Below are positions 22,829 to 60,437 of a stretch of 64,000 nucleotides of DNA, piece by piece. How positions within the stretch are numbered: position 1 is the first letter of the stretch; each line of letters starts with the position of its first letter. The position numbers and the translations under genes were made by a program. The notes under the pieces were generated by a model. The model worked only from the letters and a program-made list of their open reading frames with translations, did no database searches and was not told the origin of the DNA. The stretch covers positions 186,001-250,000 of the IMG/VR virus record IMGVR_UViG_3300019776_000324; one strand, written 5' to 3'.

Positions 22829-23222
22829 TCCATATTCTCAGCTTAGAATCGAGCTGAGCCCTGTTGGACTGCCCAATATTCGCATAATCACACCAGATGA
22901 TTTAATTGAATATACAGGATTATCTGCGCCTGTTATATTGGATTATCAAATTGATATATTAAAGCCATATAATATTATATTAGAATTATATGATAAACAT
23001 TATACTACAGAATATGAAACTGCTATAATCATTAATCAAATATGCATTGATAATATCGAAATAATACCCAAATATAGTCATTTAACTGAATATATTAATG
23101 ATCACAATAATAATAATCCAACCAATTATCTAGGATTTAATGGTAAGTGGGCACTAACTATAGATCGCCCTTTTTACCATTGGCTACACCAGCATTCTGG
23201 ACAGGGTTGGCTACTGGATTAA
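22797..23222 (+). CDS. Hypothetical protein
   Basis: Overlap-coupled to the radical SAM gene. Confidence 0.6.
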   Translation: MKNYSEVKDINPYSQLRIELSPVGLPNIRIITPDDLIEYTGLSAPVILDYQIDILKPYNIILELYDKHYTTEYETAIIINQICIDNIEIIPKYSHLTEYINDHNNNNPTNYLGFNGKWALTIDRPFYHWLHQHSGQGWLLD

Positions 23223-23227
23223 AACGG

Positions 23228-23256
23228 TTGACCAAAAACTCCATTTAGGCTATAAT
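23228..23256 (+). promoter_or_regulatory. Early sigma70 promoter, member of a dispersed family (others start at 24240, 35622, 36118, 43022, 44027, 45364, 52841, 53136, 53616, 53878, 55575, 60377)
   Basis: Consensus (G)GTTGAC(C)-17-TATAAT/TATACT, often with TGn extended -10, followed by AGGAGC SD. Confidence 0.85.
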
Positions 23257-23285
23257 GTATGTATAGTTAATAAAAAGGAGCAAGA

Positions 23286-23711
23286 ATGAAGCAGATTCAA
23301 TACGCAGGTTACAGTATTCTTAAAGACGGTACTTGGAAGTTCCGTACAGCGACTGACGAAAAACGAATCTCCCAACTAGAAGCATTTGGTGAAGCAGTTT
23401 ACATGGTCTCTATCAAGCCTGTTGAAACTAAGTCACAAGCCGCTAAGGAGTTATTGGCTATGGATTACATGGGCAAAGATCCAGCCTGTGTTGACTTCTT
23501 TACTCAGTTTGCTAAAGACGAAAACCCGTTTAAGCGTAAAGCACGGATTGTTAAGGTTACAGTGCCCAATCGTGCTATTGCTGAACTTACAGGTGCAAAG
23601 GTTCGAGTAAGTCGTGGTGTATTTGGTAAAGTATATCCAGAAATTCCGATGACACCCAAGCAAGCTGAACGGATCCGCAACGAGTTTAACGCTAAAAACA
23701 AGGTAGCTTAA
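23286..23711 (+). CDS. Early hypothetical protein, paralogue of 55679-56005
   Basis: AG..GTxKxRxAxD..RI..L...G...TK..A...L pattern shared. Confidence 0.65.
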   Translation: MKQIQYAGYSILKDGTWKFRTATDEKRISQLEAFGEAVYMVSIKPVETKSQAAKELLAMDYMGKDPACVDFFTQFAKDENPFKRKARIVKVTVPNRAIAELTGAKVRVSRGVFGKVYPEIPMTPKQAERIRNEFNAKNKVA

Positions 23712-24176
23712 TTATGTACGAACTAACATCATATGGTAATCGCGAAACAGGCGAAGCACACTATCTAGTAGATGGTGTAGAAGTTACCAAAGCTGAATAT
23801 GATCGGTGTATGGTAGAGTATCGACTAGCAAAGGCAAACTAACAAATGACCAAAGAATATATCCGCAATTTGCCCTTTCAAGAATTAATGCACTGGGCAG
23901 AGATTTACAACGAGAATCTAGCAACCGACGGCGAAGTAAGCGCAGTCAGGACGATCCTTAACGATGAAGTAGAACGCCGTATCAACAACTGGGAGGTAGC
24001 AGAAGTATGACAAATCCAATTCCAAAAAGTAGCTTATGGGCCACACCCGCAGACTTTGATCACTTGACTATTATGCTCAACGAGTGTGGCAGCAAAGAAG
24101 AACAGCGAATGGCATGGTATGGTGCTATGTTGGCCCTTAACTTGTGCCACAATTTGCTAGAACAATACGAGAAAAG

Positions 24177-24268
24177 TGTAGCATAAAAACAACACCTTAA
24201 ACCCCCGTAAAAGGGGGTTTTTCTGGGTTTACCAAACGGTTGACCCGAAATGCCCAATTTGCTATAAT
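24177..24268 (+). repeat. Operator-terminator-promoter cassette, copy 1 (copy 2 at 52776-52869)
   Basis: TGTAGCATAAAAACAACA, CCCCGTAAAAGGGG hairpin with T-tract, GGGTTTACCAAA, then TTGACC-17-TATAAT. Confidence 0.85.
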
Positions 24269-24299
24269 ATATGTATAGTGAAAATAAAGGAGCAATAAG

Positions 24300-25464
24300 A
24301 TGACTACATTACAAGTTCGACAAGGTGATATTATTCGTGCATATGACTTCAAGCCAATGGTTGGTCGTGACGATTGCTACATCGAAGGTCAAGTGATTGA
24401 AACCAATAACACCGAGCAAGGTTATCAAGCCTACAAGATTGTGGTTACCAAAGACCATTTTGGCAACGATCGAGTTTCAACTATAGCTGGTCCGGACAAT
24501 CGTGTTGGTATTGAAATGTTTGTTCCGTGGAGAGTTAGTTTTTCAGAGTTCCAAGGTCGTATTATCAACTTGAGCCGCTAAGGAGCAAGAAAATGACAGT
24601 TAAAGAATTAATCGAGCAGTTACAGAAAATGAATCCAGAATCTACTGTTTACGTTGCTAAGTTTAATTTTGCCGAGACAGGTGATTTAAGTGATTATGTT
24701 GATGCTTATGAAAGACCCGTCGGTAACGGTGGAACTGAAGCCGTAATTATTGATCGCAGTTAAGGAGCGAATGATGATACTAGAATCTAGTATGGACTAT
24801 GGTACAGGTATTGTTACTATGCTGTTCGAAGGTGAGCGTCCAAGTTATGATGCTGTTTGTGAATATTGCGACAAGAACTATGGATTTAAACCATTTGGAT
24901 TTACTGTTACAATGCCCGGTGAATATAAAGGATTAATGAATCCCGGAGTTGTTACTACTTCTAGAAAGGAATTAGAATCATGAGAGAACTTACCAAATCT
25001 GAATTAGAAACCCTGGAGTTCTTAGGTAGCTTTGGCCCTACTGTTGATCCTGTGGCCTGCGAAGTTAAAGGTTACATGCACGACAGCGAAGGTGGCGGCA
25101 AAGTGTATTTGCGTTCACCTGACCTGCGAGCCATAGCTGAAGATTTAATCTCAATTGCCCAATGGTTGGATGAGCGTGCCACAGAAGCTGAACAGGTATA
25201 ATGGAAACGCATTATAAAATTCGACATCGTGTTACTGGATTGTACAGCAAAGGAACCGCCTACAATCAGTGGAGCGAAAAAGGTAAAACTTTTGATACCT
25301 TAGGTAAGTTGCGTAGCTATATCACTCGTTGTTTGAATGATGACTATATGTGTAAGTTTCTTGGCGATTTCCAAGTAATAGAATATGAAGTTCAACAGTC
25401 GGCCGTTAAAGAGTTGCATGACATTGTGAAACCAGAAAAGATTATGGAGTTGTTAAAGAGATGA
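24300..25464 (+). other. Run of small early hypothetical ORFs (24300-24581, 24750-24983, 24980-25201, 25201-25464)
   Basis: Closely coupled ORFs with AGGAG(C) SDs downstream of an early promoter. Confidence 0.65.
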
Positions 25465-25829
25465 AAGCATTTCAAGAGATTACCGAGTGGGATACAGATT
25501 TTGCTATGCCCAACCATGTTTACTTTTTGTCAGATTCAAAGGACAAAATGTACGGTTATGTAAAGTCCAGCACAGGTGAGATTCAAGAAATGACCACTCC
25601 TTATAAGTTCAAGGCTAGTGGACGCAAGTTTAAGGAAGTTAATAACATTTGGGGGTTCTTCCCTAAAGAGGAATTGATCTTAGTTGGTGAAACTTTTCGA
25701 GTGCCTGGATCAAAGGGTTCTGTTTATACTGTGACTAATGATCGCGGATCATGGACTTGCACCTGCCCAGCCAGTAAATGGCAAAAGGGCGAGTGCAAAC
25801 ATATCATTCAGTTAAAAATTAATAATTAA
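25461..25829 (+). CDS. SWIM zinc-finger protein
   Basis: GSKGSVYTV...WTCTCP......CKHI. Confidence 0.75.
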   Translation: MKAFQEITEWDTDFAMPNHVYFLSDSKDKMYGYVKSSTGEIQEMTTPYKFKASGRKFKEVNNIWGFFPKEELILVGETFRVPGSKGSVYTVTNDRGSWTCTCPASKWQKGECKHIIQLKINN

Positions 25830-27742
25830 CTTATTTTAGTCCAACCGTAGTTTATAGTTTGGCTGGAGCCCGAATTGTTAGTAATACCAAATGTAAACAC
25901 ATTGGTATTGGCCACAGCAGGTGCTGCGTTACTAATTGATCCTGCTGTTCCAATAATTTGATTGGGTATGCTGGTCCAAACTAGATTATTTCCTGTTAGA
26001 TAATACCAGGCAAATTGTTGCCCGATCGCTGGGACATTAGTATTGCTAAGACTTACAGTAGCATTCCATACAATGATACCGTTGGGTATGTTTCCATCAA
26101 CCCACAAGGCATAAGTTGCATTTGCAGGTACTGTAAAACTGTAAGTGCCAGAACCTGTGGTTACTGTCCATGATCCTTTAGATTGAGTAGCAACATTAGA
26201 AAGTGTTGCACCATTACCAAGAAGATTACTACCTGCAATATTACCTGTGGTACTGATATTACCTGGTGTGTATAAGGTACCATCGGTACTTAACACCATT
26301 TCTTTTGGTGTACCATCGCTGTCCGCAACAAATGTGATACTGGTGGTTGAATTCAATCCTGGGGAAGCAGTTGCAGTGGCATCGCCTAGTACTAGATTAC
26401 CGTTAGTAGCTTCTACATAAACATTATTAAGAGCACGAACATTGCCGCCTGTGATGTTGCCGATTGCACTTAAATCTATAGCGCCAACACTATGAAATCC
26501 GTTTAAACTCGGCGCAGGACTTGCACCACTACCTGTGATATTACCACTGGATAATACAAGATTTCCGCCAACACCTAAATCAATTCCGCCAGGCAGAATA
26601 ACTTGACCATTATCGGTAAATGTCGACAAATATCCATTGGAGTTAATAACAATATTTGCAACTGGCGATTGTTTTGTAATAGCAACTAACCCTCCGCCAG
26701 TATATGGTGTCCACCCACTGGCATCTACTAAATCTGTATAAGTGGCGTCTGTGTATAACCGATATGTAACAGTGTTAACTGATTCATAATACCAGGTGCC
26801 CAGTGCTTGAGTAGTGCTTATGTCACCGGTAATTGTTAACTGGCCGCGAGTTGGTTGGCTAAACGGAAACCCAAATACATCCATTTGAGCACCCGGGGCT
26901 AATGCTATAGAATTTATACCATCATTGATAACAATAGCAGTACCACCGTTGATATAGCCACTGTTTAGAGAAATATTATTTGCTGTAATAGTACCACCGG
27001 TAGTTGTAGAATAAGTTACCGCGGGTCCGCTGGCACTGAATGTGACCGCGCCATTGTCGGTTACAGTTTGTGTGTTGCTAGAATCTATAAGGTATGTTCC
27101 AGCAGACTCAACATCTAATAGAAGTTCTGTACCAGTTACTGCTGTCAGTGATGTAGTTGGGACAGTAATAGTTGAAGCATTAGGATCGTACACATTATAT
27201 CCAGCTACTGCTCTAATTTGAGTTGCGCCACCGGTATACCACCATTGACCACCAGTGTTGAATTTACCAACACTTGTACTTGCTCCACTAAAATCATAAT
27301 TAGTGGTTGTTATTCCATCTGATGATCGCACACCGTCGACAAACACAGTTTCGTCACCGCTACTGTTTCTTGTTACAGCAATATGATGCCAAGTATCATC
27401 GGCCATTGGTGCTACTGTATAGTTGTTGGCTGCAACACCATCTTGGTCAATATGTATTTGAGTAGCACTAGAAATTACTAAACTAAATCCACTGTTATCA
27501 GGAGTTAACGATCCTAAAATGGGGCCAGGTAAATTTGCTGCTTGGAAATAAACAAAGCACTCAACAGTATAAGCACCCGATCCAATAGTAACACCTGGAG
27601 AGAATGACAACCAGTTGCTACCACTAAACATTAACGAACCAATATTTTCTAATGTTGTTTCTGTTGATGTTACTATATTAGTACCTGTTATATTACCTGT
27701 AGTGCTAAACCCGCCGTCCGAGTTAAATGGTTGTTGTGACAT
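25826..27742 (-). CDS. Virion fibre/adhesin with a LamG/ConA-like domain
   Basis: YTVECFVY, WHHIAVTRN, VFVDGV LamG-like motifs plus GNIT repeats. Confidence 0.75.
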   Translation of the reverse strand: MSQQPFNSDGGFSTTGNITGTNIVTSTETTLENIGSLMFSGSNWLSFSPGVTIGSGAYTVECFVYFQAANLPGPILGSLTPDNSGFSLVISSATQIHIDQDGVAANNYTVAPMADDTWHHIAVTRNSSGDETVFVDGVRSSDGITTTNYDFSGASTSVGKFNTGGQWWYTGGATQIRAVAGYNVYDPNASTITVPTTSLTAVTGTELLLDVESAGTYLIDSSNTQTVTDNGAVTFSASGPAVTYSTTTGGTITANNISLNSGYINGGTAIVINDGINSIALAPGAQMDVFGFPFSQPTRGQLTITGDISTTQALGTWYYESVNTVTYRLYTDATYTDLVDASGWTPYTGGGLVAITKQSPVANIVINSNGYLSTFTDNGQVILPGGIDLGVGGNLVLSSGNITGSGASPAPSLNGFHSVGAIDLSAIGNITGGNVRALNNVYVEATNGNLVLGDATATASPGLNSTTSITFVADSDGTPKEMVLSTDGTLYTPGNISTTGNIAGSNLLGNGATLSNVATQSKGSWTVTTGSGTYSFTVPANATYALWVDGNIPNGIIVWNATVSLSNTNVPAIGQQFAWYYLTGNNLVWTSIPNQIIGTAGSISNAAPAVANTNVFTFGITNNSGSSQTINYGWTKIS

Positions 27743-27756
27743 TTATTGTTTTCCTA

Positions 27757-29814
27757 TTAATCTACCATGAGTCCAAATTCTGTTGCATCAAAACTAGCCC
27801 AGCCATTTTGGCCCACAGGAAGTTGTAATAAAATTTGTAATTCGCCAAGTCCACCTTGTACCGCTGTAACAATAGTATCGGCAACAAGTGGATTAGCCTT
27901 AATTCTGTTGCTTACTACCCATAACAACAATCCTGAGTTAGCATAATCGTAAGTCACAACAACATCAAATTGTTCCCAGTTAGCGCCAACTCCTGTGCCT
28001 TGAACAGCAAAAGTAACTTTGGCACTGTTGATGTTTACACCTGTTTCTGACTTATACACCACAGTGGCGGAACCATCACCTGGTAATTCTACAGCAAACG
28101 GATTAGTTGCGCCAGTGTAAACACCGTTGATAATCTTGCGTGAACCTCGAAGCACTTGTGCTTCGCCCGGTGTACCATTTGACCCAGCATCTCCAACATT
28201 GGTTGGTGCTAATACTAAGTTTGCACCAGTAAATGTCCATTGTCCTTGTAATCCTGTGCCATCACCGTATGTGGAAATGTTTAATGTACCGTCAGCGTTA
28301 TCTGTAACACAACTTGAGTACATTCCACTGGAGTAATAACTTGTTAAACTAGTAATGTTACCATTGCCGCCAGTTATCATTGTGCCATCGCCCTTAACTC
28401 CAGCTGGTCCAATGTATCCACCAGTTGGCAAGTTTAAGTTGCCGTTGTTACTAAAGAACCATGAATGAGTATTACCAGTATCATTAACTCCCATTTCAAC
28501 AGAAAAACCATTAGAATCAATATAAGCCCAATTAGTTATAGCGTCAGTTGAGTTAGGATCAACATTGGCAACATCAGTGGTCCATTGTAACTGAACAAAA
28601 TTATTTGACACTAAATTAACTGGACCTGCTAGAGTATTTGCAGCGCGAATAGTACCAGGATTTGGTAAATTTAACGCACCGACATTATCAAAATACCAAA
28701 CATGCTGGTCTATTCCATCTTTAACTGCTAGTGCTAGATTGCCATCTTGTACATACAAATATCCGTCACCTGGGCCAAGTATATTTCCTAAACTGTTTTC
28801 TTGTGTGCCGTCCCAGGTGCTACTGGTTATGCCGAGGTCAAGAAAGTGTGTGCTGTCAGTGCCGTTGTCTGAAGTAATAATGTAATCGCCACTGGCTACA
28901 GGTGAGTCACTGATATTTTGAAAATTAGTTTGGCTATATCCAATAACATTGCCTGTAACTTGTGTCATTACTGACGAGCCAAGAATAGTAAATCCTGGAA
29001 CACCGGTATACAATCCATCAACTCCAGAATCTGGATTTCCACTAAATGATGCAGTATGCGCATACAAGGTGTTGCCTGCATAGTTAAATCCTGCTGCTGC
29101 TCCTAAGTGGCCATCGATGTTAATTTGCACTGAAGTATTGCCATCGGCGGCAGGAATATTACCAATAAAATTAGTAGCTGTAATATTGCCCGAGGTACTA
29201 ATGCTGTTGCTACCAAAGCTGGCTAATAGAGCAGTTACATTGCTGTTACTATAATTTCCAGCAGGCAAGTTGGTCAATTGACTGCCATCACCTTTGACAA
29301 ATCCGGCTGTAATATTACCAGTAGTACTAATTACATTAGCGCCAAAACTAGCCAAGAATGTAGCAACATTACTATTGCCATAGTTACCGCTACCGCCACC
29401 AATACCGCTAAGGATACTTACGCCATTGGCATAGTTGATGTTTGAAGTGTTGCTTGGTAATGTTATATTACCAGTTTTACCAAATGTATAAGTCGCTGTA
29501 AGTACGGCGTTGTTGCCAGCACTTAGAGCAATATTGCCATAGGTGTTGTTTAGTTGAATAGGACTGGTACTGCCATTGGCAGGAATAACCATTGCCGCTG
29601 TAGCACCATGTGATAAATCTGCATTTTCTATGATCATGCCATTTAGATCATAGATAGCGTCTCCGACAAATCCAATGTTGCCAGTACTAATTGGAACAGT
29701 GCCGCCACCTGTGCCTGCAGCTACCCACTTGGTGCCATCGTAAGTATAAACTACACCGTTTTCGGCTGTAAATGTATCACCTGTAGTAGGGTTTGGTGGA
29801 AATGTAATATTCAT
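27757..29814 (-). CDS. Tail-fibre-like structural protein
   Basis: N-terminal FPPNPTTGD..YTYDGTKW module; GNITAG..GDGSQLTNLP repeats. Confidence 0.75.
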   Translation of the reverse strand: MNITFPPNPTTGDTFTAENGVVYTYDGTKWVAAGTGGGTVPISTGNIGFVGDAIYDLNGMIIENADLSHGATAAMVIPANGSTSPIQLNNTYGNIALSAGNNAVLTATYTFGKTGNITLPSNTSNINYANGVSILSGIGGGSGNYGNSNVATFLASFGANVISTTGNITAGFVKGDGSQLTNLPAGNYSNSNVTALLASFGSNSISTSGNITATNFIGNIPAADGNTSVQINIDGHLGAAAGFNYAGNTLYAHTASFSGNPDSGVDGLYTGVPGFTILGSSVMTQVTGNVIGYSQTNFQNISDSPVASGDYIITSDNGTDSTHFLDLGITSSTWDGTQENSLGNILGPGDGYLYVQDGNLALAVKDGIDQHVWYFDNVGALNLPNPGTIRAANTLAGPVNLVSNNFVQLQWTTDVANVDPNSTDAITNWAYIDSNGFSVEMGVNDTGNTHSWFFSNNGNLNLPTGGYIGPAGVKGDGTMITGGNGNITSLTSYYSSGMYSSCVTDNADGTLNISTYGDGTGLQGQWTFTGANLVLAPTNVGDAGSNGTPGEAQVLRGSRKIINGVYTGATNPFAVELPGDGSATVVYKSETGVNINSAKVTFAVQGTGVGANWEQFDVVVTYDYANSGLLLWVVSNRIKANPLVADTIVTAVQGGLGELQILLQLPVGQNGWASFDATEFGLMVD

Positions 29815-29883
29815 TCTTAAGTCCTGTTATTGTTCTTCTATATTTACCGTGACATAATGCAGTCACAGTTGCTAGCTTTCTGT

Positions 29884-30147
29884 TTAAATTTCTTCTTCTA
29901 ACCGATATCCACATCCATTGGGAATTCCTGACACTGTCAATGCTGTAACATCAGGATATCGACGACAGCCTTCGGGTCTAGTTTCATAGATATTACAAGT
30001 ACCATGTTCAGTATTGTATTCTGGACAAAATGTTTCAACATAAGTTTCTGAATCAGTGTAGGTTCTGACCCTGCAACATCCTCCATTGCAGGCTAGGCCA
30101 CCTAGGCATTGGCCACGAACCACAAGGTTGATCCATATTACACCCAT
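29884..30147 (-). CDS. YkgJ/CxxCxxCC-type cysteine-cluster protein
   Basis: C...CNGGCC...CP......CNIYETRPEGCRRYP. Confidence 0.7.
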   Translation of the reverse strand: MGVIWINLVVRGQCLGGLACNGGCCRVRTYTDSETYVETFCPEYNTEHGTCNIYETRPEGCRRYPDVTALTVSGIPNGCGYRLEEEI

Positions 30148-35550: not shown

Positions 35551-35579
35551 AGCCCAAGTGCAATGCTTGGGCTTTTTTA
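35551..35579 (+). terminator. Intrinsic terminator
   Basis: AGCCCAAG-tgcaatg-CTTGGGCT plus T-tract. Confidence 0.75.
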
Positions 35580-35678
35580 TGAGCCCAAATTTCCTTCATT
35601 TTTGCACTAGTTTTAGCTCGGTTGACCATTAATTACCAAAATGCTATAATATAGTTGTATAGTTAGGAAAGGATCATT

Positions 35679-36128
35679 ATGAAACGAGGTGAAATGCTTG
35701 CAAAAATGTTAGTTATTGCTACCAACGCACATGATGGCCAATTTGATAAGGGCGGCGCACCTTACATTTTGCACCCTCTAAAAGTCATGCACTACCTAAA
35801 GACCGACGACGAAGAATTGCAATGTATTGCTCTTGGACACGATGTTATTGAAGACACTAAGGTTACTTACAGGGACTTAGCTGACGCTGGAATTAGCGTA
35901 AGAGTTATGGATGGTATTAAGGCTCTAACTAAGCAACCTGGGCAGACACTAGACGAATACAAAGAAGGTGTGTTTGCCAATCGTGATGCTATGCTGGTTA
36001 AGAGTTGCGACCTGCGTCATAACAGTGATATCCGTCGGTTAAAGGGTGTCACTGATAAAGACCTTGCTAGGATTGCAAAATACAATCAGTTCTACATGGA
36101 GATCCAATCTCGGTTAGTTGACCATTAA
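35679..36128 (+). CDS. HD-domain (p)ppGpp hydrolase-like protein (small alarmone hydrolase/Mesh1-like)
   Basis: AHDGQFDKGGAPYILHP, LGHDVIEDT, VKSCDLRHN. Confidence 0.8.
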   Translation: MKRGEMLAKMLVIATNAHDGQFDKGGAPYILHPLKVMHYLKTDDEELQCIALGHDVIEDTKVTYRDLADAGISVRVMDGIKALTKQPGQTLDEYKEGVFANRDAMLVKSCDLRHNSDIRRLKGVTDKDLARIAKYNQFYMEIQSRLVDH

Positions 36129-36175
36129 ATCCGTTCGTTGTATAATAGTAGTATATTAAGAATTAAGGATATCGT

Positions 36176-42270: not shown

Positions 42271-43020
42271 ATGAAGGTAGATAATTTTGTAGTATTAGAC
42301 AGCGTGTATGGCAAGTTCATTGTACCACGCACTTGTTTGTTTCAAGCAGAATCTCTCGTCAAGACTGGTCGTACACATATCGAGGATGAACTAAACAATA
42401 TATTTGCTATTGTTGGAACATTACCTGCTGGATCGATCATTGTTGATGGTGGATGCAACGCCGGGTTCTTTACAATTCCTGTGGCACACATGACGCAGAA
42501 TCGTGACATAAGAATCATCAGCTTTGAACCACAGCGTCAGTTATTTCAGGCAGTAGGCGGCAGTCTTGCACTCAACGGATACCAGCATGTTTACCTACAC
42601 AATGTTGGTCTTGGTACAGAACCCGGAATAGCTCAACTGCCGGCAATTGACTACAGCGTAGCTCAGGACTTTGGCACTGTACAACTTAGCGACGATACCA
42701 CAGTAGAAGAAGATGGCTGGTTAAACGATCGTGTGGTAGACATAACCAGTATTGACGCTATGGATCTACCCAGTTTAGAATTTTTTAAATTGGATGTAGA
42801 AGGATACGAAGTTCCAGCACTGCAAGGATCAATTAACACTATACAAAAATACAGACCTTGGATATGGGTCGAGTACTTTATTACTGGTGCAGAAACGATC
42901 AAAGCGGCACTCAGTGATATAGATGACTATGAATTCTTTATAGTAGACTACCAAAATATGCTGTGTGCTCCTAAGGAAAAACTGGCTCAAATTACCACTG
43001 TAGGGCTGAAAAAAGTATAG
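42271..43020 (+). CDS. FkbM-family SAM methyltransferase
   Basis: VDGGCNAGFF, SFEPQ, KLDVEGYE. Confidence 0.88.
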   Translation: MKVDNFVVLDSVYGKFIVPRTCLFQAESLVKTGRTHIEDELNNIFAIVGTLPAGSIIVDGGCNAGFFTIPVAHMTQNRDIRIISFEPQRQLFQAVGGSLALNGYQHVYLHNVGLGTEPGIAQLPAIDYSVAQDFGTVQLSDDTTVEEDGWLNDRVVDITSIDAMDLPSLEFFKLDVEGYEVPALQGSINTIQKYRPWIWVEYFITGAETIKAALSDIDDYEFFIVDYQNMLCAPKEKLAQITTVGLKKV

Positions 43021-43078
43021 GTTGACCAGAAATTACCCTTTTAGTATAATAGTAGTATAGTAACTAATAGGGGTTGTA

Positions 43079-43615: not shown

Positions 43616-45123
43616 ATGAAATCATATCGTTTTTTAGGTGAAGAAGCAGAAGCATTGGGTAACCGTCTGGACCATGCTCGTAAATGTGCCACTGGCGCAA
43701 AGACCGCTTGGGCAAAGAATTACTGGCAACGAAATGTAGAACGGTTATTGTTTCAATGGCGTCAATTACCTATTCTACACGACGGCGGCGCACAGATGAC
43801 TATCATTCCTAAATGGATGGTCAGTTACGATTTTTATGAAAAGTCTGGTGCTCATGAATATACTGGCATTACTGAACGAGCATATGACAAGTTATTTAGA
43901 GAAAGTGCCAACTTGGATGCAAGTTGGGAAAATCATAGATCAGCAAGATTAGCAAAGGCACAATAATGGCAATAATTTACAAAGATAAACACGGCAAGTT
44001 CTTTTATGTACAAGAGCGTTATTCGGTTGACCAAAAAGACTGGATCCGTTATACTAATACTATGGGTGAGGAATTTACTTGCCTTAAAGACGCATTTGAT
44101 GAACGATTTACTCCACAGGAGCAATAAATGACTGAAGAACGCTTGATGGTAGCAGAAGCTGTAATGGCCGGCCAGATTCCAGAATATCACTTGACACAAG
44201 ATGAAATTGATGAGCTGTTTGAACGATGCTGTGACCTGGCCACAGAAAAGTTAATGGCAGAAGCTGAAGAGCGTGGTTGCTCAGTGTTCTACGGCGTTGA
44301 GGGCGATACAGTACAATAATGTCCGACATCAAGTTCAAACGATTCTCTGCAGATAAACAGGAACAAATTCAACAATTTGTTGCTTATGCACAGATGTGCG
44401 GTTTGTCTGGCAAGGATATCCGTAGCATCGGCGATAAGCTGGATCGTGATCGTAAGGCTGAAGAGCGCCGTCAAAACTTGGAAATAGTTCAAGGCTTTGA
44501 ATGTTTACCCATCGGCGACGACAAGCGTTATAAGAATCATGGTGTAGGTTATTTTAACCAAATCTTAGATCGCAGATTCAAACTTAAAACTGCCCGCGGC
44601 CCTTACAACTTCAAACAAGATTACAACGGTTGGGAAATTAAAAGTTTAGAGACTGGCACAATTAAACGGCATCGTGTTGAAGTTTATGATTATCAACTTT
44701 CTGAAAGCAGTGGCTGGGAACGCAGAATGCGATATGCAGTATTGCTTGATATTTCATTTGGTAAATTGAAGTTAGATTTTTAACATGGATCACCAATTTA
44801 TTGTCATGTGGTGCAACGAAGGCTTGGAGTATGTGGCTGACATTACTGCTGATCAACAGCGTGTGGTGTGGGAAAACTTACAAGGTCACGAAAGTCCAAG
44901 ACATGCGTATGCCAATCCTTTCCATCTTAGATTGCGGGCACAACTTAACTTGGACCGACATTATGAGATATATATTGTTGATGGTGCAGAAGGTATAACG
45001 GAACAAGAAATTAAAAATATGTTTCGCTATGATCCACAAGGATCTGCAGATTTAATACGCAGTAAAGGTATTTGTTTTTACAGTAATCGACGAGATACAA
45101 CTCAACAATCGGTTATTGTCTAG
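43616..45123 (+). other. Hypothetical early ORFs (43616-43966, 44128-44319, 44319-44783, 44785-45123)
   Basis: SD-preceded ORFs; early promoter at 44027. Confidence 0.6.
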
Positions 45124-45352: not shown

Positions 45353-45420
45353 GAGCATTTTGGTTGACGGACACAAGTATTTTTGCTATACTATAGCTCT
45401 TAATAACTTTTAAGGTGACA

Positions 45421-45873: not shown

Positions 45874-45894
45874 TATAGTGTGTTATAATAAACA

Positions 45895-47727: not shown

Positions 47728-47728
47728 C

Positions 47729-48775: not shown

Positions 48776-48776
48776 T

Positions 48777-49700
48777 ATGGAAAAACTTGAATATGGACTA
48801 TCCAGTGTCGGACTAGGAACCAATATTGGTTTCATGTCGGCGTTGATTGACGCAGGAATTCCAAGTTGCATTTATGTTGATGATCAAAATCATCTCATGT
48901 TCAAGTTAAAACGCATTTTTAACATAAGCGACGATGTATTGGATGTGGTGTTTGATCCAGACTACAATAACAACATAACTGACCAACTGGGCGATCAACT
49001 AAAATATTTTAGTCCGTATTTTGATGTAGATTCAATTAACGCATTTGATCAGCAGTTCTCAATTAACAAACAAAACAAGCCAGCTATTGGCCTAGCAATG
49101 TTTCATCGCAGTAACCCTGGGGAAAACATAGATAACCGGTATCCTCACAGCAAGTTATACTCCAGAGAAGTATATGCCAACATTTTTAATCTAATTGTTG
49201 CCAGCGGATATGATGTAATTACATTCAACAGTGAAAACATAGATATCGAACACAAAGTTTGGCAACTCAACGAACTATGCGAGTGCGTTATTGGATATGA
49301 AGGCGGAATTGCTCATATTGCACACTTATTAAAAATACCAAGTATTGTTCTTCCGTATCATCATTGTGGAGATGGTGTCAGACCCTTATGGGCCGACAGT
49401 GGCATACTGGATGTTAACCTATTACATGCTCCTCAACTGTTACACATAGATCGTAGAACTTATTTTTTAAGTTCCCCAAGAGAAATTGTCAATTGGTCTC
49501 CTGATCAACTCAAACAAAAAATTCAAGACTTGCACGATCAAAAAGGAAACAATGTATTATTTGGCGCAGGAGTTACTGTAAAGAATGACACATTACAAGT
49601 GTTTACTGATGTTCCTGGGTTAGAAACAATGTCACCGTGGTTATCTACTTTTGAATTTGAGTTTGTAACAAACTATATTAAAGGTCGCACATTTGTCTAA
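48777..49700 (+). CDS. Glycosyltransferase family 9-like protein
   Basis: VIGYEGGIAHIAHLLKIPSIVL resembles GT9 xIGxDSGxxHxAxAxxxP. Confidence 0.55.
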   Translation: MEKLEYGLSSVGLGTNIGFMSALIDAGIPSCIYVDDQNHLMFKLKRIFNISDDVLDVVFDPDYNNNITDQLGDQLKYFSPYFDVDSINAFDQQFSINKQNKPAIGLAMFHRSNPGENIDNRYPHSKLYSREVYANIFNLIVASGYDVITFNSENIDIEHKVWQLNELCECVIGYEGGIAHIAHLLKIPSIVLPYHHCGDGVRPLWADSGILDVNLLHAPQLLHIDRRTYFLSSPREIVNWSPDQLKQKIQDLHDQKGNNVLFGAGVTVKNDTLQVFTDVPGLETMSPWLSTFEFEFVTNYIKGRTFV

Positions 49701-50445
49701 ACAATTACATGCGTTTGGTGATAGTTTTATTGTAGGGGACCAAGATGATTTTTTGCACGAAGTCCCTACTGCTACTCACGGCATGCCTTGGGACCAAAGA
49801 CTTGAATATTTAAAAACACAAGTAAGTTTTGTTTCAATACTGGCCAAACACTACGGATATGATTTAACAAATTATGCCGAGCGTGGCACGGGTAACTATC
49901 CGCAGATTGATCGCTTATGGACAAATTTAATCAACGGTAATATTAAACCAGGCGACTTGGTTTTGTTTGGAATCACTACTACTATTAGAGATCGATTCAT
50001 GTTGCATGAAGTTGATAGATGCACTAGTGATAAATTTGGTGCGTTTATGGTTGATAGGAACCTGTTGGATAAGAACAGTGATCGCCAGCGACTGTTAGAA
50101 CTTGATTATTTTTATATTCTTAGTTTGCTGGATCAGTTGAGCAAAAAGTTTAATGTTAGAATTATCAAGTTCAATCTGTTTGACAATTCGTTAGATCATG
50201 CCAACTCCAAAATAACTGATGTATGTCAAGTTGACGACTTTGTGGGCTGGGCAACTCCAGGCAATACTTTGGTTGATATTCTTAACGATTCCTGGGGACA
50301 GGGTGTATTTTATACCTTTGCACACGAAGAAATAAAAATACCAACAGGATACGAATACTTGTACACAGCTAAAAAACATCCTAGCATTGAAGGACATAAA
50401 AAGATTGCCGATTGGTGGATTTTGAACAATATTGTGTCAACTTAA
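49693..50445 (+). CDS. SGNH/GDSL hydrolase-like protein
   Basis: AFGDSF, G.GN and HPSIEGHKKIA blocks. Confidence 0.7.
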   Translation: MSKQLHAFGDSFIVGDQDDFLHEVPTATHGMPWDQRLEYLKTQVSFVSILAKHYGYDLTNYAERGTGNYPQIDRLWTNLINGNIKPGDLVLFGITTTIRDRFMLHEVDRCTSDKFGAFMVDRNLLDKNSDRQRLLELDYFYILSLLDQLSKKFNVRIIKFNLFDNSLDHANSKITDVCQVDDFVGWATPGNTLVDILNDSWGQGVFYTFAHEEIKIPTGYEYLYTAKKHPSIEGHKKIADWWILNNIVST

Positions 50446-50470
50446 TACCTAGCTTGTGCGTTAATATAGT

Positions 50471-52785: not shown

Positions 52786-52869
52786 AAACAACACATTTTT
52801 AGCCCCGTAAAAGGGGCTTTTTTACGGGTTTACCAAAAGGTTGACTCAAAATGCCCAATTTGCTATACT
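52776..52869 (+). repeat. Operator-terminator-promoter cassette, copy 2
   Basis: TGTTGCCTAAAAACAACA, GCCCCGTAAAAGGGGC hairpin, GGGTTTACCAAA, then TTGACT-17-TATACT. Confidence 0.85.
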
Positions 52870-52898
52870 ATTATTATAGTGAACAATAAGGAGCTGAA

Positions 52899-54591
52899 AT
52901 GAATCAAGTAGAATATAAAGTTGGAGATGATGTTAGCCACGGAATTGGTGGCGATCGTTACTACGATGGTAAAATTGCTAGAATCACCAAGCGTTTTATT
53001 TTTACAGATTCAGGTCGTCAATATACCCGTAAAGAAGCCAAAGATGGCCGGGTGTATTATACTCAAACCGGTTGCAAATACTGTTATTTGATGCCAGGCA
53101 AGCACGAATACATGGACCCACACTTCTAAAAACGGTTGACCCGAAATACCCAATTTGCTATAATAGTATATAGAGTTAAAAAACGGAGCAAGAAATGACA
53201 AGAAAACATTTTATCGCAATGGCAAAAGAAATCGCTGAAATGCCAGATCGTAAGTCAGCCAAAATTGCAGCCGAAGCATTTGCCCAGGTAGCCCGTTCAG
53301 TTAATCCAAGATTTGACTTCGGTCGTTTCTTTACAGCCTGTGGAGTTTAATAATGTTGAAAGAATTTAACGAAGTTCAAAAACTTGTTCAAGTTCTCCGT
53401 GGCCCACAGTTTGATCGCAAGCGTCACGGTGGTTTATTTGATCGTGGCAGTGCAGACAGTTATTATGGTCGTGGACACGATCCACACTGGTATCCAGAGG
53501 GCACCGGTAACGGTGTTAAAATTACCGAGTTAAACTCGGCAGAATTAGAAGAATATTTGGCTGGATACGAGCATAATGAACGCCATGGTGACAAAAAGAG
53601 TTACGACTAAAACGGTTGACCAGAAATTACCGATTTGTTATACTATTAACATAGTAAAGAAAAAGGAGCAGAAAATGACTACATTACAAGACAAATTAGG
53701 CCGTACCTTAACAGTAGGTGATCGTGTAGCTTATGCCTCATTTAAAAACCTGGGCATGACATTTGGTACTGTTACCAAATTGGGTCGTTTGCGGGCCATA
53801 GTAACACCAGAAGCACCTGCATTTAACCCCGATTCTGAGTCGTTTCGCACTACAGAATTGGTAAAGATCTAAAACGGTTGACCCGAAATACCCAATTTGC
53901 TATAATAGTAGTATAGTAATTAATTAGGAGCAGAAATGAACTACACAGTAGAACAAATTAAAGAAATTGTGTTTGAAGCTAGACTCGAGGCACAGAAAGC
54001 CGCTAAGTTCTTTTTTGATACCAAGTTAGGCGGCGAGGACAAGTTTAGTTGTGGTTTTGCTTGGGTTGATATCTACGGAGTCAAAGGTAATACCAAATTG
54101 GGTCGTGCGCTAAAAGAAGCTGGTGTGCGTAAGAGTTATACCGGTAGCTACCAAATTTGGAACCCAAGTGGCTTGGGGGTGCAAAACATTGACACCCTTG
54201 AAGCAGGTGCAGAAGCGGCCGCCAAAGTATTTGAGAATTACGGCTTTAAGGCCTATGCTGGCTCAAGGTTAGACTAATGAAACTTATTGCTCGAACAAAA
54301 ACCGGTTACCTGGCCGAGATCGAAGAAGGAGAAATTGCCAACCTCCTGGGCTATAATAGTACATACGACGATGGATATCGTACAGTGGTTAGAAATCAAC
54401 CCAGTGAAGACTTAACAGGCTTTGAAGTTGAAGTAGAGAGGATGTATGATATTGCCAAGATGTTGCGTGGTCTAAACAAGACAGATATTGAAAAAGTTCA
54501 AGCAACTCTCAGGAATACACAAGAAAAGATAGATGAGTTGCAAGATATTGTTAATAAATTGACATTGTTTGAAACATTAAAGGACGCTTAA
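52899..54591 (+). other. Array of promoter-led single-gene or two-gene units (ORFs 52899-53129, 53195-53350, 53353-53610, 53675-53872, 53936-54277, 54277-54591)
   Basis: Four promoter copies in about 1.1 kb; 40 bp identical at 53129-53168 and 53871-53910. Confidence 0.8.
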
Positions 54592-55416: not shown

Positions 55417-55678
55417 AAGCATTTGTGTTAGGAACTGTTTTTGGTATTTTGATTTGCACTGTTGGTCTATCCGGAATTGCTAGGATTTTGGACAACGGTG
55501 TGGCCAAAGTCCAGGAAGTGTCCAAAGAAGCTGCCAAATAAGGCATTTTGGACAACCAAAAGCATACTATATGGTTGACATTAAAACCCAATTCAGCTAT
55601 AATAGTATTTGTAGTATGTAATAAAGGCAGTACAGTATTTTAAATCAACTTAGTAAGGCAACTTAGAAAGGCAACATC

Positions 55679-56437: not shown

Positions 56438-56443
56438 TACCAA

Positions 56444-56743: not shown

Positions 56744-56773
56744 TAGGTTAGCCGTTTGGCTAAGTATTTTGAT

Positions 56774-57246: not shown

Positions 57247-57317
57247 AATACTTGACACACTGCCTTTATAGTGTATAATTAATAGGTGCTCAGGCACTTT
57301 ATATAAAGGAAATAACA

Positions 57318-57506: not shown

Positions 57507-57955
57507 TGATGGATGCCCATTCTCAAATGGCCGAAGCACTAGCTGATAGCATGACTGTATCGGTTAGTGCTCCTGGAACTTATAGTACAATTACCAATGG
57601 CGGGTTTGCCTACTCTAACACTGCTATTACCAACAACGGTGTTGCTACTGGATCCTTAGGACCGTACACTGTTAGCACTGGTTATTCACAACCATGGTTC
57701 AGCAACTCTGCTAGTCCAAAAATCCGTTTAGATGGTGAAGACGCTGACATAGAAGTCAACGGCGAAAGCCTCATGGGCTTGATGAAAGAAATCCGCGAAC
57801 GACTAAATCTCATAACCATTAACGAAAAGATGGAAAAGGAATGGGACGAACTACGAGCCTTAGGTGATCAATATCGTGCCCTAGAAGCCAAGTTAAAAGA
57901 ACAAGGCGAAATGTGGAACAAGCTAAAAGCTATGCCACCGCCTGATATCAAGTAA
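57506..57955 (+). CDS. Hypothetical protein with a C-terminal coiled coil
   Basis: ADIEVNGESL...IRERLNLI...EWDELRALGDQYRALE. Confidence 0.6.
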   Translation: MMDAHSQMAEALADSMTVSVSAPGTYSTITNGGFAYSNTAITNNGVATGSLGPYTVSTGYSQPWFSNSASPKIRLDGEDADIEVNGESLMGLMKEIRERLNLITINEKMEKEWDELRALGDQYRALEAKLKEQGEMWNKLKAMPPPDIK

Positions 57956-59337
57956 TGTCAGCATGGAAAGAGTTTTATAATCAAATTCGCGACCCAAGCT
58001 GGCCCGACTGCGACAACGAAACTGACTTTGAACAACTACCTGACAATATCAAACAAGAGTGTATCAAAGTGTTTGGTTATCAGCCCAACCAGTTTAAAAA
58101 AACTTCTAAATTAAAAAATCAAGTATTTCCTATTAGGTCTGAAACAAGTTGTCAACTCAAATGGTCCTGGAGTACATTATTTTTAACCACAGAAGAAACA
58201 GCCAGTTGCCACAGAACTGACCATCATAAATTTGATACAGATCAATTTGATTTTCATAATACACCAAGTAAATTAGACGACCGTCGGCGTATGCTTGAAG
58301 GGTTGTGGCCCAAGCGCGGTTGCAACTATTGTCAAGATATTGAATCAGCGGGCGGCCAAAGTGATCGCATTACTAATTTAGATTTTCCTGGCATACATGC
58401 ACCTCCAGAATTAGACACTGATCCAACCGCGGTACATGTTACTCCTAGAATACTTGAAGTTTATTTTGATAACACTTGTAATCTAAAATGTCTATACTGT
58501 GGCCCGCACTTTAGCAGTTTATGGGATGCTGAAAATATAAAATTTGGGCAACCTGCATTTAACAAAAGCAAAAACATTGAGCAAAATAAACAAAAAATAT
58601 TTGAATGGCTAAAAGTCAACGGAAAACATTTAACTCATTTTAATATTCTCGGTGGTGAACCGTTGTATCAAAGTGAACTAGAAGAATGTTTAGAATTATT
58701 TGATCAGTATCCAGCACCTGAGCTTAAATTACAAATTTTTACCAATCTTAATTGTCGATTGCCCTATCTACAAAAAATAGTACAACGGGTTGGTCAATTA
58801 GTTGATCAAGATAAACTAAGAGAATTTGAAATTACTGCTAGTTTAGATTGTTGGGGAGCTCCGCAAGAATATGTTAGATATCCGTTAAACTTGGTTGCAT
58901 GGGAAAAGAATTTTGAATATTTGTTAACTCAAGACTGGATTAATTTAATAGTAAGTTCAACAGTAACGCCACTTACAATAAAAACTCTTCCGGACTTGCT
59001 TGAAAAAATACAACAGTGGAATCAGCAAAGAATTGTGCATCATTATCAAAATAGTGTAAATGGTCCTAGTTACATGTTCATTGATATTTTTGGTGACATT
59101 TTTGCCGAGGATTTTAAACGAGCATTGGATTTTAAACCTGCTGATACTCCTGAGCAACAATCAAGCAAAGGTTATCTTGAAGGGATTGCAACGCAGTCTG
59201 GTTCCAAAGGTCCAAACTTAAAAGAAATCAAAAATCTGTTTAATTTTTTAAATGAAATGGATCGCAGAAGATCGACTAGTTGGCGTGAGGTGTTTCCTTG
59301 GTTGATTGTGGAATTTAATAAACATGGGTTATATTGA
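57955..59337 (+). CDS. Radical SAM protein (second copy)
   Basis: CNLKCLYC, GGEP, FTN, EYVRYP; N-terminal CQLKW..SCHR and CNYC. Confidence 0.85.
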   Translation: MSAWKEFYNQIRDPSWPDCDNETDFEQLPDNIKQECIKVFGYQPNQFKKTSKLKNQVFPIRSETSCQLKWSWSTLFLTTEETASCHRTDHHKFDTDQFDFHNTPSKLDDRRRMLEGLWPKRGCNYCQDIESAGGQSDRITNLDFPGIHAPPELDTDPTAVHVTPRILEVYFDNTCNLKCLYCGPHFSSLWDAENIKFGQPAFNKSKNIEQNKQKIFEWLKVNGKHLTHFNILGGEPLYQSELEECLELFDQYPAPELKLQIFTNLNCRLPYLQKIVQRVGQLVDQDKLREFEITASLDCWGAPQEYVRYPLNLVAWEKNFEYLLTQDWINLIVSSTVTPLTIKTLPDLLEKIQQWNQQRIVHHYQNSVNGPSYMFIDIFGDIFAEDFKRALDFKPADTPEQQSSKGYLEGIATQSGSKGPNLKEIKNLFNFLNEMDRRRSTSWREVFPWLIVEFNKHGLY

Positions 59338-59439
59338 GTAATATACCCAGATAACGGCAAAAACCTATCAAAAATCATAGATTTTTATTAACATCAATAG
59401 TATAATACTAAGTATTTTAGAGAACAGTAAAACAACCAG

Positions 59440-59700
59440 GCTGTCATTTGATTGATCAGCGGAGGATTACAATCTAGAACTGTTCCAAAACGGACGGGCT
59501 TGTGCCGTAAAGCAAGCAGTAGTATAAGAGGACTTCGGAACTCCTCTTCAATGACAAATGGTATAGGCCGTGTGAGAAACAAAGCACCGCTTAAAGAGTA
59601 TGGCACTGAGGCCCGAGGTCTTAATCTGTCTCCAATTCTATACACTTCATCTGTCTTTGCGCCCATCCTGGGAATCCGCTGATACGCACAGTATTGCGTC
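59440..59700 (+). ncRNA. Long structured 5' leader / candidate ncRNA upstream of a cell wall hydrolase
   Basis: 9-bp long-range stem ATCAGCGGA(59455-63)/TCCGCTGAT(59675-83); AGAGGA..TTCG..TCCTCT hairpin; ACGCA/TGCGT hairpin next to the SD. Confidence 0.5.
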
Positions 59701-59712
59701 GAGGAGACGAAG

Positions 59713-60375
59713 ATGAAACTTAAAAAACTTCTTATATCGTTATTAACAGTAGTAAGCAGTAGTGCATTTGCAGTAGATGTAGCAGAAGTAAAAGCAGAAG
59801 TCTCTTATAGAGATCAAATTGTTGACCAAGCCAGCAAGTTTGTTGAGCGCACAGTTAACATAATTGCAACTCCATTCTTGTCAGACAAGGATGTAGAGTG
59901 TCTAGCTCGTAACATATTTTACGAGTCAGGTAGCGAACCAACTGAGGGCAAAATTGCCGTTGGTCTTGTTACTATAAATCGTGCCCAAGATCCACGCTTT
60001 GGTAAGAGCGTATGCGAAGTTGTCAAAGCTCGCACAGTGGTCACTAAAACACGCGAAGTCAAACGCACAGAAATGGTTCGAGTAGGGTATTTTGGCCCTC
60101 CTGAAAAAGTTGTTAGAACAGAAGAAGTAGTTCAACAAGTGCCAGTATGTCAGTTTTCGTGGACATGCCAGGGCTATGCCCGTGCTCCAAAACCCACAGA
60201 TGAACGCTGGGTAGAAAGTCAGCGTATTGCTGAAGGTATTGCTCGTGGAGACTACGAAGAATATCGCGGCAAATACGGCTCTGCACTATTCTTCCACTCT
60301 ACAGGAGTGCGCCCAATTTGGGCTAAAACCAAGAAGTTTGTAACCAAGACTGGACAGCACTTATTCTACGAATAG
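59713..60375 (+). CDS. Cell wall hydrolase (SleB/Hydrolase_2), secreted
   Basis: Signal peptide; CLARNIFYESGSE, AVGLVTINR, CQFSW, FFHS, GQHLFY. Confidence 0.9.
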   Translation: MKLKKLLISLLTVVSSSAFAVDVAEVKAEVSYRDQIVDQASKFVERTVNIIATPFLSDKDVECLARNIFYESGSEPTEGKIAVGLVTINRAQDPRFGKSVCEVVKARTVVTKTREVKRTEMVRVGYFGPPEKVVRTEEVVQQVPVCQFSWTCQGYARAPKPTDERWVESQRIAEGIARGDYEEYRGKYGSALFFHSTGVRPIWAKTKKFVTKTGQHLFYE

Positions 60376-60437
60376 GTTGACCAAATATTCGCATTTTGTT
60401 ATAATAGTAGTATGAATAACAAATGTGAGTTCGTATA

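What the first reader, a model, noticed from the sequence alone, without database searches (positions are those of the whole stretch)
23220..60405. Promoter cassettes fused to the stop codon of the upstream gene: a gene-shuffling architecture
Seen: at least 13 related early promoters. In many, the upstream ORF's stop is directly followed by (AAAC)GGTTGACC (23222, 43020, 53129, 53610, 53872, 60375) or overlaps it (36128). Two copies share 40 identical bp (53129-53168, 53871-53910). Two unrelated downstream ORFs start with the same 16 nt ATGACTACATTACAAG (24300, 53675). Known: repeated promoter/stem-loop cassettes mediate modular shuffling in some T4-type phages. Inference: recombination between repeats excises, inserts and reorders one-gene units, giving an integron-like but integrase-free array of host-takeover or anti-defence genes.
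Basis: partly seen in the sequence, partly recalled or inferred. Interest (0 to 1): 0.6.

Follow-up and report, generated by a model that had tools for sequence, protein, structure and literature searches.

The report
Early promoter cassettes in jumbo phage
The repeats are strong early promoters, each with a fixed leader and ribosome site, in an uncultured freshwater jumbo phage; they occasionally act as crossover points for swapping small genes, as already known for T4-type phages, but most gene gain and loss here happens at ordinary gene boundaries without them.

Summary
The window holds 13 related sigma-70-type promoter cassettes, all on the + strand. Eleven have a fixed 59-63 nt from GGTTGACC to the ATG. 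In seven the upstream stop codon abuts or overlaps the cassette. The 40-bp identical pair and the shared 16-nt gene start are both real.

The genome is a 344-kb freshwater jumbo myovirus, distantly related to Rak2-like, T4-superfamily phages such as Atu_ph07 and CBB.

Nothing upstream of GGTTGACC is conserved in 592 family cassettes, and stop positions form a broad continuum. The "fusion" is therefore genome compaction, not a mobile stop-plus-promoter unit.

Cassette-to-cassette exchanges do occur:
- a 742-bp block between the two identical 40-bp cores, absent from relatives that carry one cassette at that site;
- the promoter-plus-gene unit at 53614-53872, found in three different cassette-bounded contexts;
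- a variable slot at 35620-36175.

They are a small minority, however. Only 2 of 37 clean indels are cassette-to-cassette. In 620 gene-level events, 20 have a cassette at both boundaries against 12 expected, and 457 have none against 457 expected. Most indels run from start codon to start codon with RBS/ATG microhomology.

This is a PeSL-like situation in a new phage lineage, not an integron-like system.

The parts
23226..23285 (+). Promoter-leader-RBS cassette before gene 23286-23711. The upstream stop ends at 23222.
   Evidence: Orthologous cassettes are present in G006, G007, G008 and G010.
24200..24222 (+). Intrinsic terminator (CCCCC/GGGGG stem, then a T run) 15 nt upstream of cassette 24238. 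Together they form a composite terminator-promoter, like a PeSL.
   Evidence: Fold z = -4.4.
24238..24299 (+). Cassette before gene 24300-24581, preceded by the conserved GGGTTTACCAAA linker.
35552..35578 (+). Intrinsic terminator after gene 35243-35512. It is conserved in G006, G007, G008 and G010.
35620..35678 (+). Cassette heading the window-specific gene 35679-36128.
35679..36128 (+). Variable cargo gene (HD-type metal-dependent phosphohydrolase, 149 aa), flanked by cassettes on both sides and absent from all four syntenic relatives.
   Evidence: PHROG 990 at E = 2.5e-55. G006 and G008 have a single hybrid cassette at this site.
36116..36175 (+). Cassette (variant with AGTTGACC) before the conserved gene 36176-36694. 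The stop of the upstream gene lies inside its spacer.
43020..43078 (+). Cassette before gene 43079-43606 (cell-wall hydrolase). The upstream TAG shares its G with GGTTGACC.
   Evidence: Pfam PF07486.
44025..44127 (+). Cassette core lying inside the small ORF 43966-44127, with a 103-nt leader to gene 44128.
45362..45420 (+). Divergent cassette before the window-specific genes 45421-46467.
52801..52823 (+). Intrinsic terminator (CCCC/GGGG stem) upstream of cassette 52839. This is a second composite terminator-promoter.
52839..52898 (+). Cassette orthologous to one in G006, G008 and G010. Here it heads gene 52899-53129; in those relatives it heads an unrelated 90-aa gene.
53134..53194 (+). Cassette before gene 53195. 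It is the left copy of the 40-bp identical core (53129-53168).
53134..53875 (+). 742-bp block (gene 53195, gene 53353, cassette 53614, gene 53675) bounded by the two identical 40-bp cores. It is absent from relatives that join gene 52899 to gene 53936 through one cassette.
   Evidence: L253, L265 and others.
53614..53872 (+). One-gene unit: cassette 53614 plus gene 53675-53872 (65 aa). It is found behind three different upstream genes in relatives, always between cassettes.
   Evidence: (L130 versus L139).
53876..53935 (+). Cassette before gene 53936. It is the right copy of the 40-bp identical core (53871-53910).
54277..54591 (+). Window-specific gene with no cassette at either end. It is an example of a start-codon-to-start-codon indel with 4-nt microhomology.
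   Evidence: Joint 54276>54593. Junction sequences.
55520..55553 (+). Hairpin upstream of cassette 55573.
   Evidence: Fold z = -3.8.
55573..55678 (+). Cassette of a distinct subtype (TTGACA, 106-nt leader) before the conserved 108-aa gene 55679. It is positionally conserved across about 60 relatives.
60375..60437 (+). Cassette before gene 60438. It carries an inverted repeat across the -10 region, with compensatory changes in orthologues.
24300..24315 (+). 16-nt gene start shared with 53675-53690, encoding MTTLQ.

Best explanation
The repeats are the early promoters of a roughly 344-kb freshwater jumbo myovirus of the Rak2-like branch of the T4 superfamily.

Anatomy. Each is a complete expression cassette of about 60 nt with these parts:
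- an extended -35 (GGTTGACC);
- a conserved 17-bp spacer;
- a TG-extended consensus -10;
- a conserved initial transcribed stretch that contains a second -10-like hexamer;
- a strong AAGGAG ribosome site;
- the ATG at a fixed distance.

Host RNA polymerase with sigma-70 would fire them immediately after infection (inferred). They would drive short, unidirectional operons of small ORFan genes.

Why stops abut them. The genome is tightly packed, so the preceding gene usually ends at or inside the cassette. That is compaction, not a fused mobile element.

Role in gene turnover. The cassettes are 30-60 bp of near-identical sequence in direct orientation, and the phage has T4-like recombination genes. 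They therefore sometimes serve as crossover sites that insert, delete or relocate the genes between them, as described for PeSL elements.

This is a minor route. Most gene turnover in this phage family happens at any gene boundary, as modules running from one start codon to the next and joined through a few bases of RBS/ATG microhomology.

Shown versus inferred. Shown: the anatomy, distribution, conservation, comparative breakpoints and statistics. Inferred: promoter activity, early timing and the recombination mechanism.
For: Cassette anatomy and strand bias.

Fixed GG-to-ATG distance (mode 61 in about 600 cassettes).

Phage identity:
- tail sheath, portal, gp46-like SbcC and family-B DNA polymerase;
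- polymerase 44-50% identical to Phosso, Atu_ph07, CBB and GAP32;
- freshwater metagenomes.

Same architecture reported for CBB: 18 RpoD-like promoters with an UP-like element, clustered before short hypothetical early ORFs (PMC5259590).

Compaction: stop positions form a continuum and nothing upstream of GG is conserved.

Cassette-to-cassette events.

Nearby cassettes are more alike than distant ones (36.7 versus 31.8 of 61 positions, p=3e-4).

Most indels are unrelated to cassettes.

Start-to-start modules with 3-16 nt microhomology.
Against: - No transcript data exist, so promoter activity and early timing rest on consensus alone.
- No relative of the window closer than about 82% nucleotide identity was found. 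Very recent events in this genome could not be sampled without bias.
- The nucleotide-level survey needs flanks of at least 250 bp, which may under-sample the densest cassette arrays.
- Gene calls came from a home-made caller.
- The counted events are not phylogenetically independent.
- With leaderless cassettes included, both-boundary events show a small excess (20 against 12.4 expected). In the window, 2 of about 11 lineage-specific blocks are cassette-flanked against about 0.3 expected. A modest real preference therefore cannot be excluded.
Confidence: 0.75

Rival explanations
1. One reading: recombination between promoter repeats is the main engine. It excises, inserts and reorders one-gene units, giving an integron-like, integrase-free array.
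For: - The hot spot at 52.8-54.0 kb has four cassettes in 1.1 kb.
- A 742-bp block there is flanked by perfect 40-bp repeats and is absent in relatives with one cassette.
- The 53675 unit occurs in three contexts.
- There are 15 different arrangements among 19 complete loci at this site.
- The 35.6-kb slot is a further case.
- PeSL is a precedent, with mini-circles demonstrated (PMC2839356).
Against: - Boundaries of gene gain and loss match random expectation with respect to cassettes.
- 31 of 37 clean indels have no cassette.
- Gene families occur with or without their own cassette.
- Many cassettes head multi-gene operons rather than one-gene units.
- The stop codon is not part of the repeat.
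- No circular junctions could be looked for, because only contigs were available.
Confidence: 0.15
2. The cassettes are similar only because of functional constraint on strong promoters and translation signals. They play no part in recombination, and the cassette-bounded differences are coincidences of gene-boundary indels in a compact genome.
For: - Orthologous cassettes keep position-specific signatures across genomes, so there is no wholesale homogenisation.
- Both-boundary events are close to chance frequency.
Against: - The 40-bp perfect identity is an outlier among cassette pairs (next longest 24). It flanks exactly the block that is missing from relatives.
- Single cassettes at empty sites look like hybrids of the two flanking copies (L100; G006).
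- The alignments overlap by 31-52 nt at empty sites.
Confidence: 0.1

Closest known systems
PeSL elements (promoter-early stem-loops) of T4-type phages: RB49/phi1, T4/PST, KVP40/nt-1 (Arbiol et al. 2010, PMC2839356; Comeau et al. 2014, PMC4122927)
   Same: - Repeated strong sigma-70-like early promoters in direct orientation, concentrated in hyperplastic regions of small ORFans.
- Some indels and replacements are bounded by them.
- Two or three copies here are coupled to a GGGG/CCCC stem-loop terminator.
   Different: - Most copies here lack the stem-loop: seven abut the upstream stop codon.
- The conserved unit extends downstream (leader plus RBS to the ATG) rather than upstream.
- No upstream AT-rich block is conserved.
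- Cassette-bounded events are a small minority of indels.
- Mini-circles are untested.
- The host phage is a Rak2-like jumbo phage, not a Tevenvirinae member.
RpoD-like early promoter clusters of Rak2-like jumbo phages (vB_PcaM_CBB, GAP32; Buttimer et al. 2017, PMC5259590)
   Same: - Nearest cultured relatives by DNA polymerase.
- Tens of sigma-70 consensus promoters clustered before short hypothetical ORFs read in one direction, interpreted as the early region.
   Different: - The polymerase is only 44% identical.
- The extended cassette described here (spacer, leader, fixed ATG distance) and its role in gene exchange did not appear in the passages of that paper read here (a term search).
- An UP-like element is reported for CBB but is not conserved here.
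Integrons
   Same: A unidirectional array of small cargo genes with repeated boundary sequences.
   Different: - No integrase and no attI or attC sites.
- Each repeat is itself a promoter, whereas an integron has a single Pc.
- Boundaries of most cargo genes lack the repeat.
- Any exchange would run by general homologous or microhomology recombination.

Membership tests
PeSL (T4-type promoter-early stem-loop cassettes) | Strong sigma-70-like early promoter repeated many times in direct orientation. | tested here: met
   - 13 copies in the window and 35 in the genome, all on the + strand, with a near-consensus -35, a 17-bp spacer and a TG-extended -10.
- Early timing is inferred, not measured.
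PeSL (T4-type promoter-early stem-loop cassettes) | [quoted passage not shown] | tested here: not met
   - The 20 positions upstream of GG have near-zero information in 592 unique cassettes.
- An A-rich AAAAC flank is present in only some window copies.
PeSL (T4-type promoter-early stem-loop cassettes) | Adjacent stem-loop that acts as a terminator (often GGGG...CCCC). | tested here: not met
   - Present at only 3 of 13 cassettes: terminators at 24200-24222, 35552-35578 and 52801-52823. There is also a hairpin at 55520-55553.
- Seven cassettes abut or overlap the upstream stop, leaving no room for one.
PeSL (T4-type promoter-early stem-loop cassettes) | Preferential location in hyperplastic regions next to ORFans. 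| tested here: met
   - 27% of genes in the variable stretch upstream of gene 55679 have their own cassette, against 12.5% in the 20-kb neighbourhoods.
- Genes downstream of cassettes are small (median 108 aa against 160) and have no informative family match.
PeSL (T4-type promoter-early stem-loop cassettes) | Indels and replacements between close relatives have their breakpoints in the elements. | tested here: inconclusive
   - Clear examples exist.
- They amount to only 2 of 37 clean indels, and 20 of 620 gene-level events against 12.4 expected.
- No relative of the window above 85% nucleotide identity was available.
PeSL (T4-type promoter-early stem-loop cassettes) | Formation of mini-circles by recombination between neighbouring elements. 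| not testable with these tools
   Only assembled contigs of public runs could be laid on the window, with no raw reads.
Integron | Tyrosine-recombinase integrase with attI and attC recombination sites. | not tested
- The repeats are promoters, and most cargo boundaries lack them.
Rak2-like jumbo myoviruses (T4 superfamily) | T4-type core replication and structural genes, with closest similarity to Rak2, CBB, GAP32 and Atu_ph07. | tested here: met
   - DNA polymerase 44-50% identical to Phosso, Atu_ph07, CBB and GAP32.
- Tail sheath, portal and a gp46-like nuclease.
- Genome of 344 kb.

The most novel reading that the evidence does not exclude
In this freshwater Rak2-like phage lineage, a promoter-leader-RBS cassette (rather than a promoter-terminator PeSL) might act as a portable exchange site. 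Promoter-led ORFan units would then move between a few hot slots (35.6 kb, 52.8-54 kb), possibly via mini-circles exchanged among co-infecting relatives. The conserved spacer and the -10-like hexamer at the transcript start might additionally be a regulatory or recombination-protein target.
Probability: 0.25. Interest if true: 0.45.

Novelty: new member of a known kind. Interest (0 to 1): 0.3.

Why it matters
The finding extends the T4-type picture to an uncultured freshwater jumbo-phage lineage. In that picture, early promoter repeats sit in hyperplastic regions and occasionally mediate modular exchange.

More usefully, it puts numbers on the idea. In roughly 2 Mb of related sequence, promoter repeats account for only a few percent of gene-sized indels. 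The dominant pattern is start-codon-to-start-codon modules joined by RBS/ATG microhomology.

That tempers 'integron-like' readings of such arrays. The work also supplies a well-defined cassette consensus for annotating early genes in these phages.

Tried and rejected
- GenBank phages: megablast and blastn of two 4-kb stretches gave no match.
- Close relatives: IMG/VR and metagenome scans gave many relatives, but none above about 82% nucleotide identity to the window.
- Circular or deletion junction reads could not be looked for. The five public runs are kept as contigs with small shares. Several short joints there (sides of 24-30 nt) were judged uninterpretable. The joint 53579>53869 turned out to be a relative with a different downstream neighbour, not a clean deletion.
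- Recent lateral transfer of gene 53675: its third-codon-position identity to G008 (76%) is high but not an outlier. Rejected as evidence.
- Homology of ORFs 24300 and 53675: none by BLAST. The MTTLQ start also occurs in another member of the 24300 family (L045), so a window-specific conversion is not required.
- T4-type late promoter TATAAATA: not enriched in this genome.
- Enrichment of breakpoints at cassettes was tested four ways, all null or marginal (57/69, 64). The raw 5-fold enrichment over random bases is explained by breakpoints falling at gene junctions in general.
- Function of the small ORFs: Pfam and PHROGs gave only 'unknown function', apart from a cell-wall hydrolase (43079) and an HD phosphohydrolase (35679).
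- One call failed on a reference format and was repeated through loci.
Full report
WHAT THE SEQUENCE IS

The window is bases 186001-250000 of a 344,244-bp IMG/VR virus record with 40.5% G+C. It has no nucleotide match among GenBank phages.

It encodes a tail sheath, a portal, a gp46-like SbcC nuclease and a family-B DNA polymerase. The polymerase is 44-50% identical to those of Sinorhizobium phage Phosso, Agrobacterium phage Atu_ph07, Pectobacterium phage CBB and Cronobacter phage GAP32. The phage is therefore a distant member of the Rak2-like jumbo myoviruses within the T4 superfamily. Public runs holding parts of the stretch are freshwater metagenomes.

Of 467 genes called by my own simple caller, 403 are on the + strand.

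CHECK OF THE OBSERVATION

GGTTGACC occurs nine times on the + strand and never on the - strand, against 1.3 expected. A weight matrix built from the 24 strict genome copies finds 13 cassettes in the window and 35 in the genome, all on the + strand.

Eleven of the 13 have the downstream ATG 59-63 nt after GG.

The 40-bp identity 53129-53168 = 53871-53910 is exact. It is the longest in-register match among all cassette pairs in the genome; the next longest is 24.

The 16-nt shared gene start is real. Two gene starts matching over the 13 nt after the ATG is very unlikely by chance (my estimate is about 1e-4 over all gene pairs in the window). The two proteins are unrelated by BLAST.

ANATOMY OF THE CASSETTE

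The same element was found in at least 118 IMG/VR stretches, many on contigs of 300-365 kb. From 592 unique copies in relatives, the conserved unit has these parts:
- it starts sharply at GGTTGACC;
- a conserved spacer follows (an AAAT...ATTTG dyad);
- then a TG-extended TATAAT;
- then a conserved initial transcribed stretch containing a TATAGT-like hexamer exactly 11 nt after the -10 (137 of 592 copies);
- then an A-rich stretch, AAGGAG and the ATG.

A second size class has the ATG 36-37 nt after GG, which implies leaderless transcripts.

Nothing upstream of GG is conserved. In 607 cassettes with an upstream gene, the stop-to-GG distance is a continuum:
- 171 stops lie inside the cassette;
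- 24 lie at -1;
- 44 lie at 0-2;
- 39 lie at +3;
- the rest lie further away.

The 'fusion' of stop and promoter is therefore tight packing, not a structural part of a mobile unit.

Three window cassettes (24238, 35620, 52839) are preceded by canonical intrinsic terminators. Two of these have CCCC/GGGG stems and a shared GGGTTTACCAAA linker. These are true terminator-promoter composites and are conserved in position in relatives.

COMPARATIVE TEST OF THE SHUFFLING IDEA

I assembled syntenic regions of 39-52 kb from four relatives (G006, G007, G008, G010; about 75% nucleotide identity). I also collected 79 IMG/VR loci centred on the orthologue of gene 55679 and 80 metagenome loci centred on gene 52899.

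Gene order is conserved, but small genes turn over heavily.

Test 1, window gene junctions against the four relatives. Synteny breaks occur at 28 of 38 junction-relative cells with a cassette and 117 of 169 without (odds ratio 1.24, p=0.70).

Test 2, nucleotide-level comparison of 162 dereplicated loci.
- 29% of junction-level breakpoints fall at cassette junctions, against 18% of all junctions. The capture window is wider for cassette junctions.
- Among 37 roughly independent clean indels, 2 are cassette-to-cassette, 4 touch a cassette on one side and 31 have none.

Test 3, gene-family strings, 620 distinct indel events.
- No cassette at either boundary: 457 observed, 457 expected.
- Cassette at both boundaries: 20 observed, 12.4 expected.
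- The first gene of an inserted block carries a cassette less often than average.
- The gene after the block carries one more often than average.

Test 4, the most variable stretch only. Both boundaries carry a cassette in 8 events against 9.6 expected.

Junction sequences of cassette-free indels show modules running from one start codon to the next, with 3-16 nt of shared RBS/ATG sequence. Freshwater contigs show the same for window gene 54277: joint 54276>54593 has 4 nt shared.

The same gene family is found with or without its own cassette in different genomes, for example 53936, 54757 and 53353.

WHERE CASSETTES DO MARK EXCHANGES

(a) 53134-53875. Several relatives (L253, L265 and others) join gene 52899 to gene 53936 through a single cassette. 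The window has two cassettes with identical 40-bp cores and 742 bp between them, carrying genes 53195 and 53353, cassette 53614 and gene 53675. The alignments overlap by about 52 nt on the single cassette.

(b) The unit of cassette 53614 plus gene 53675. It lies behind gene 53353 in the window, behind a different gene and in front of 53195 in G008, and directly behind 52899 in three metagenome loci. It is always cassette-bounded.

(c) 35620-36175. G006 and G008 have terminator, one cassette, then gene 36176. That single cassette resembles 35620 at its 5' end and 36116 at its 3' end. The window carries an extra HD-phosphohydrolase gene between two cassettes. G007 and G010 carry other cargo there.

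(d) Cassette 52839 is orthologous across genomes but heads different genes.

(e) L056 versus L100, at 97.8% identity, differ by a 464-bp unit with a 31-nt overlap inside the cassette.

Nearby cassettes are slightly more alike than distant ones.

INTERPRETATION

The cassettes are best read as host-polymerase early promoters, each with a built-in leader and ribosome site. This matches the RpoD-like promoter clusters reported before short early ORFs in phage CBB (PMC5259590).

They resemble the PeSL elements of T4-type phages (PMC2839356, PMC4122927). Both are repeated early promoters in hyperplastic regions that sometimes bound indels.

They differ from PeSLs in three ways. Most lack the stem-loop. 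There is no conserved upstream AT-rich block. They bound only a few percent of indels.

T4-like recombination needs only short patches of homology (stated in PMC2839356). The cassette is therefore simply the longest of several kinds of conserved gene punctuation that can be used, and the shorter RBS/ATG motifs are used far more often.

The integron analogy does not hold.

The function of the cargo genes is unknown.

LIMITS

- There are no transcript data and no raw reads.
- No relative is closer than about 82% nucleotide identity.
- Gene calls are home-made.
- Counted events are not phylogenetically independent.
- The nucleotide survey may under-sample arrays of very short units.

Noticed in passing
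window 60375-60437, with orthologues in G006, G008 and G010: An inverted repeat spans the -10 region and transcript start of this promoter (CGCA..TGTTAT / ATAACA..TGCG). The arms show compensatory differences between genomes. This could be an operator or a 5' hairpin specific to this gene.
   Followed up: no
family-wide; in the window, for example 53165-53180 and 53907-53920: A -10-like hexamer (TATAGT or similar) sits exactly 11 nt after the true -10 in 137 of 592 cassettes, at about the transcript start. With the -10 it forms a CTATA...TATAG dyad. That placement is reminiscent of sigma-dependent promoter-proximal pause elements or an operator.
   Followed up: partly
G000 positions 14470, 112635, 199819 and 261489; relatives; histogram: A second class of cassettes has the ATG 36-37 nt after GG, only 6-7 nt after the -10. 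About 63 of roughly 600 cassettes are of this kind. This implies leaderless mRNAs for some early genes.
   Followed up: partly
window 21569-22828 and 57955-59337; G000 76544-78118: At least three radical-SAM domain proteins are encoded in one phage genome. Their roles are unknown.
   Followed up: no
window 25826-35108, - strand: Three large ORFs (638, 685 and 1656 aa) read against the early arrays and have no Pfam or PHROG match. The 685- and 1656-aa proteins are 36% identical paralogues. They are possibly fibre or other structural proteins.
   Followed up: no
window 24300-24315 and 53675-53690; L045:9296: The shared MTTLQ start of two unrelated small proteins also occurs in another lineage's member of the 24300 family, while other orthologues start MVGLT, MEVQ or MNFT. 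The cause is open: a short conversion tract or selection on the translation start.
   Followed up: partly
window 46480-50445: A block of larger genes is variably present among relatives. It includes a 415-aa protein with a methyltransferase-like PHROG match and a 348-aa protein with a P-loop ATPase and a GNAT domain (PHROG 11143).
   Followed up: no
G000 ends: The 'direct terminal repeat' of the record is only about 100 bp: the first 50 bases recur at position 344146. It may be an assembly overlap of a circularly permuted or circular map rather than a true long terminal repeat like those of CBB or XacN1.
   Followed up: no
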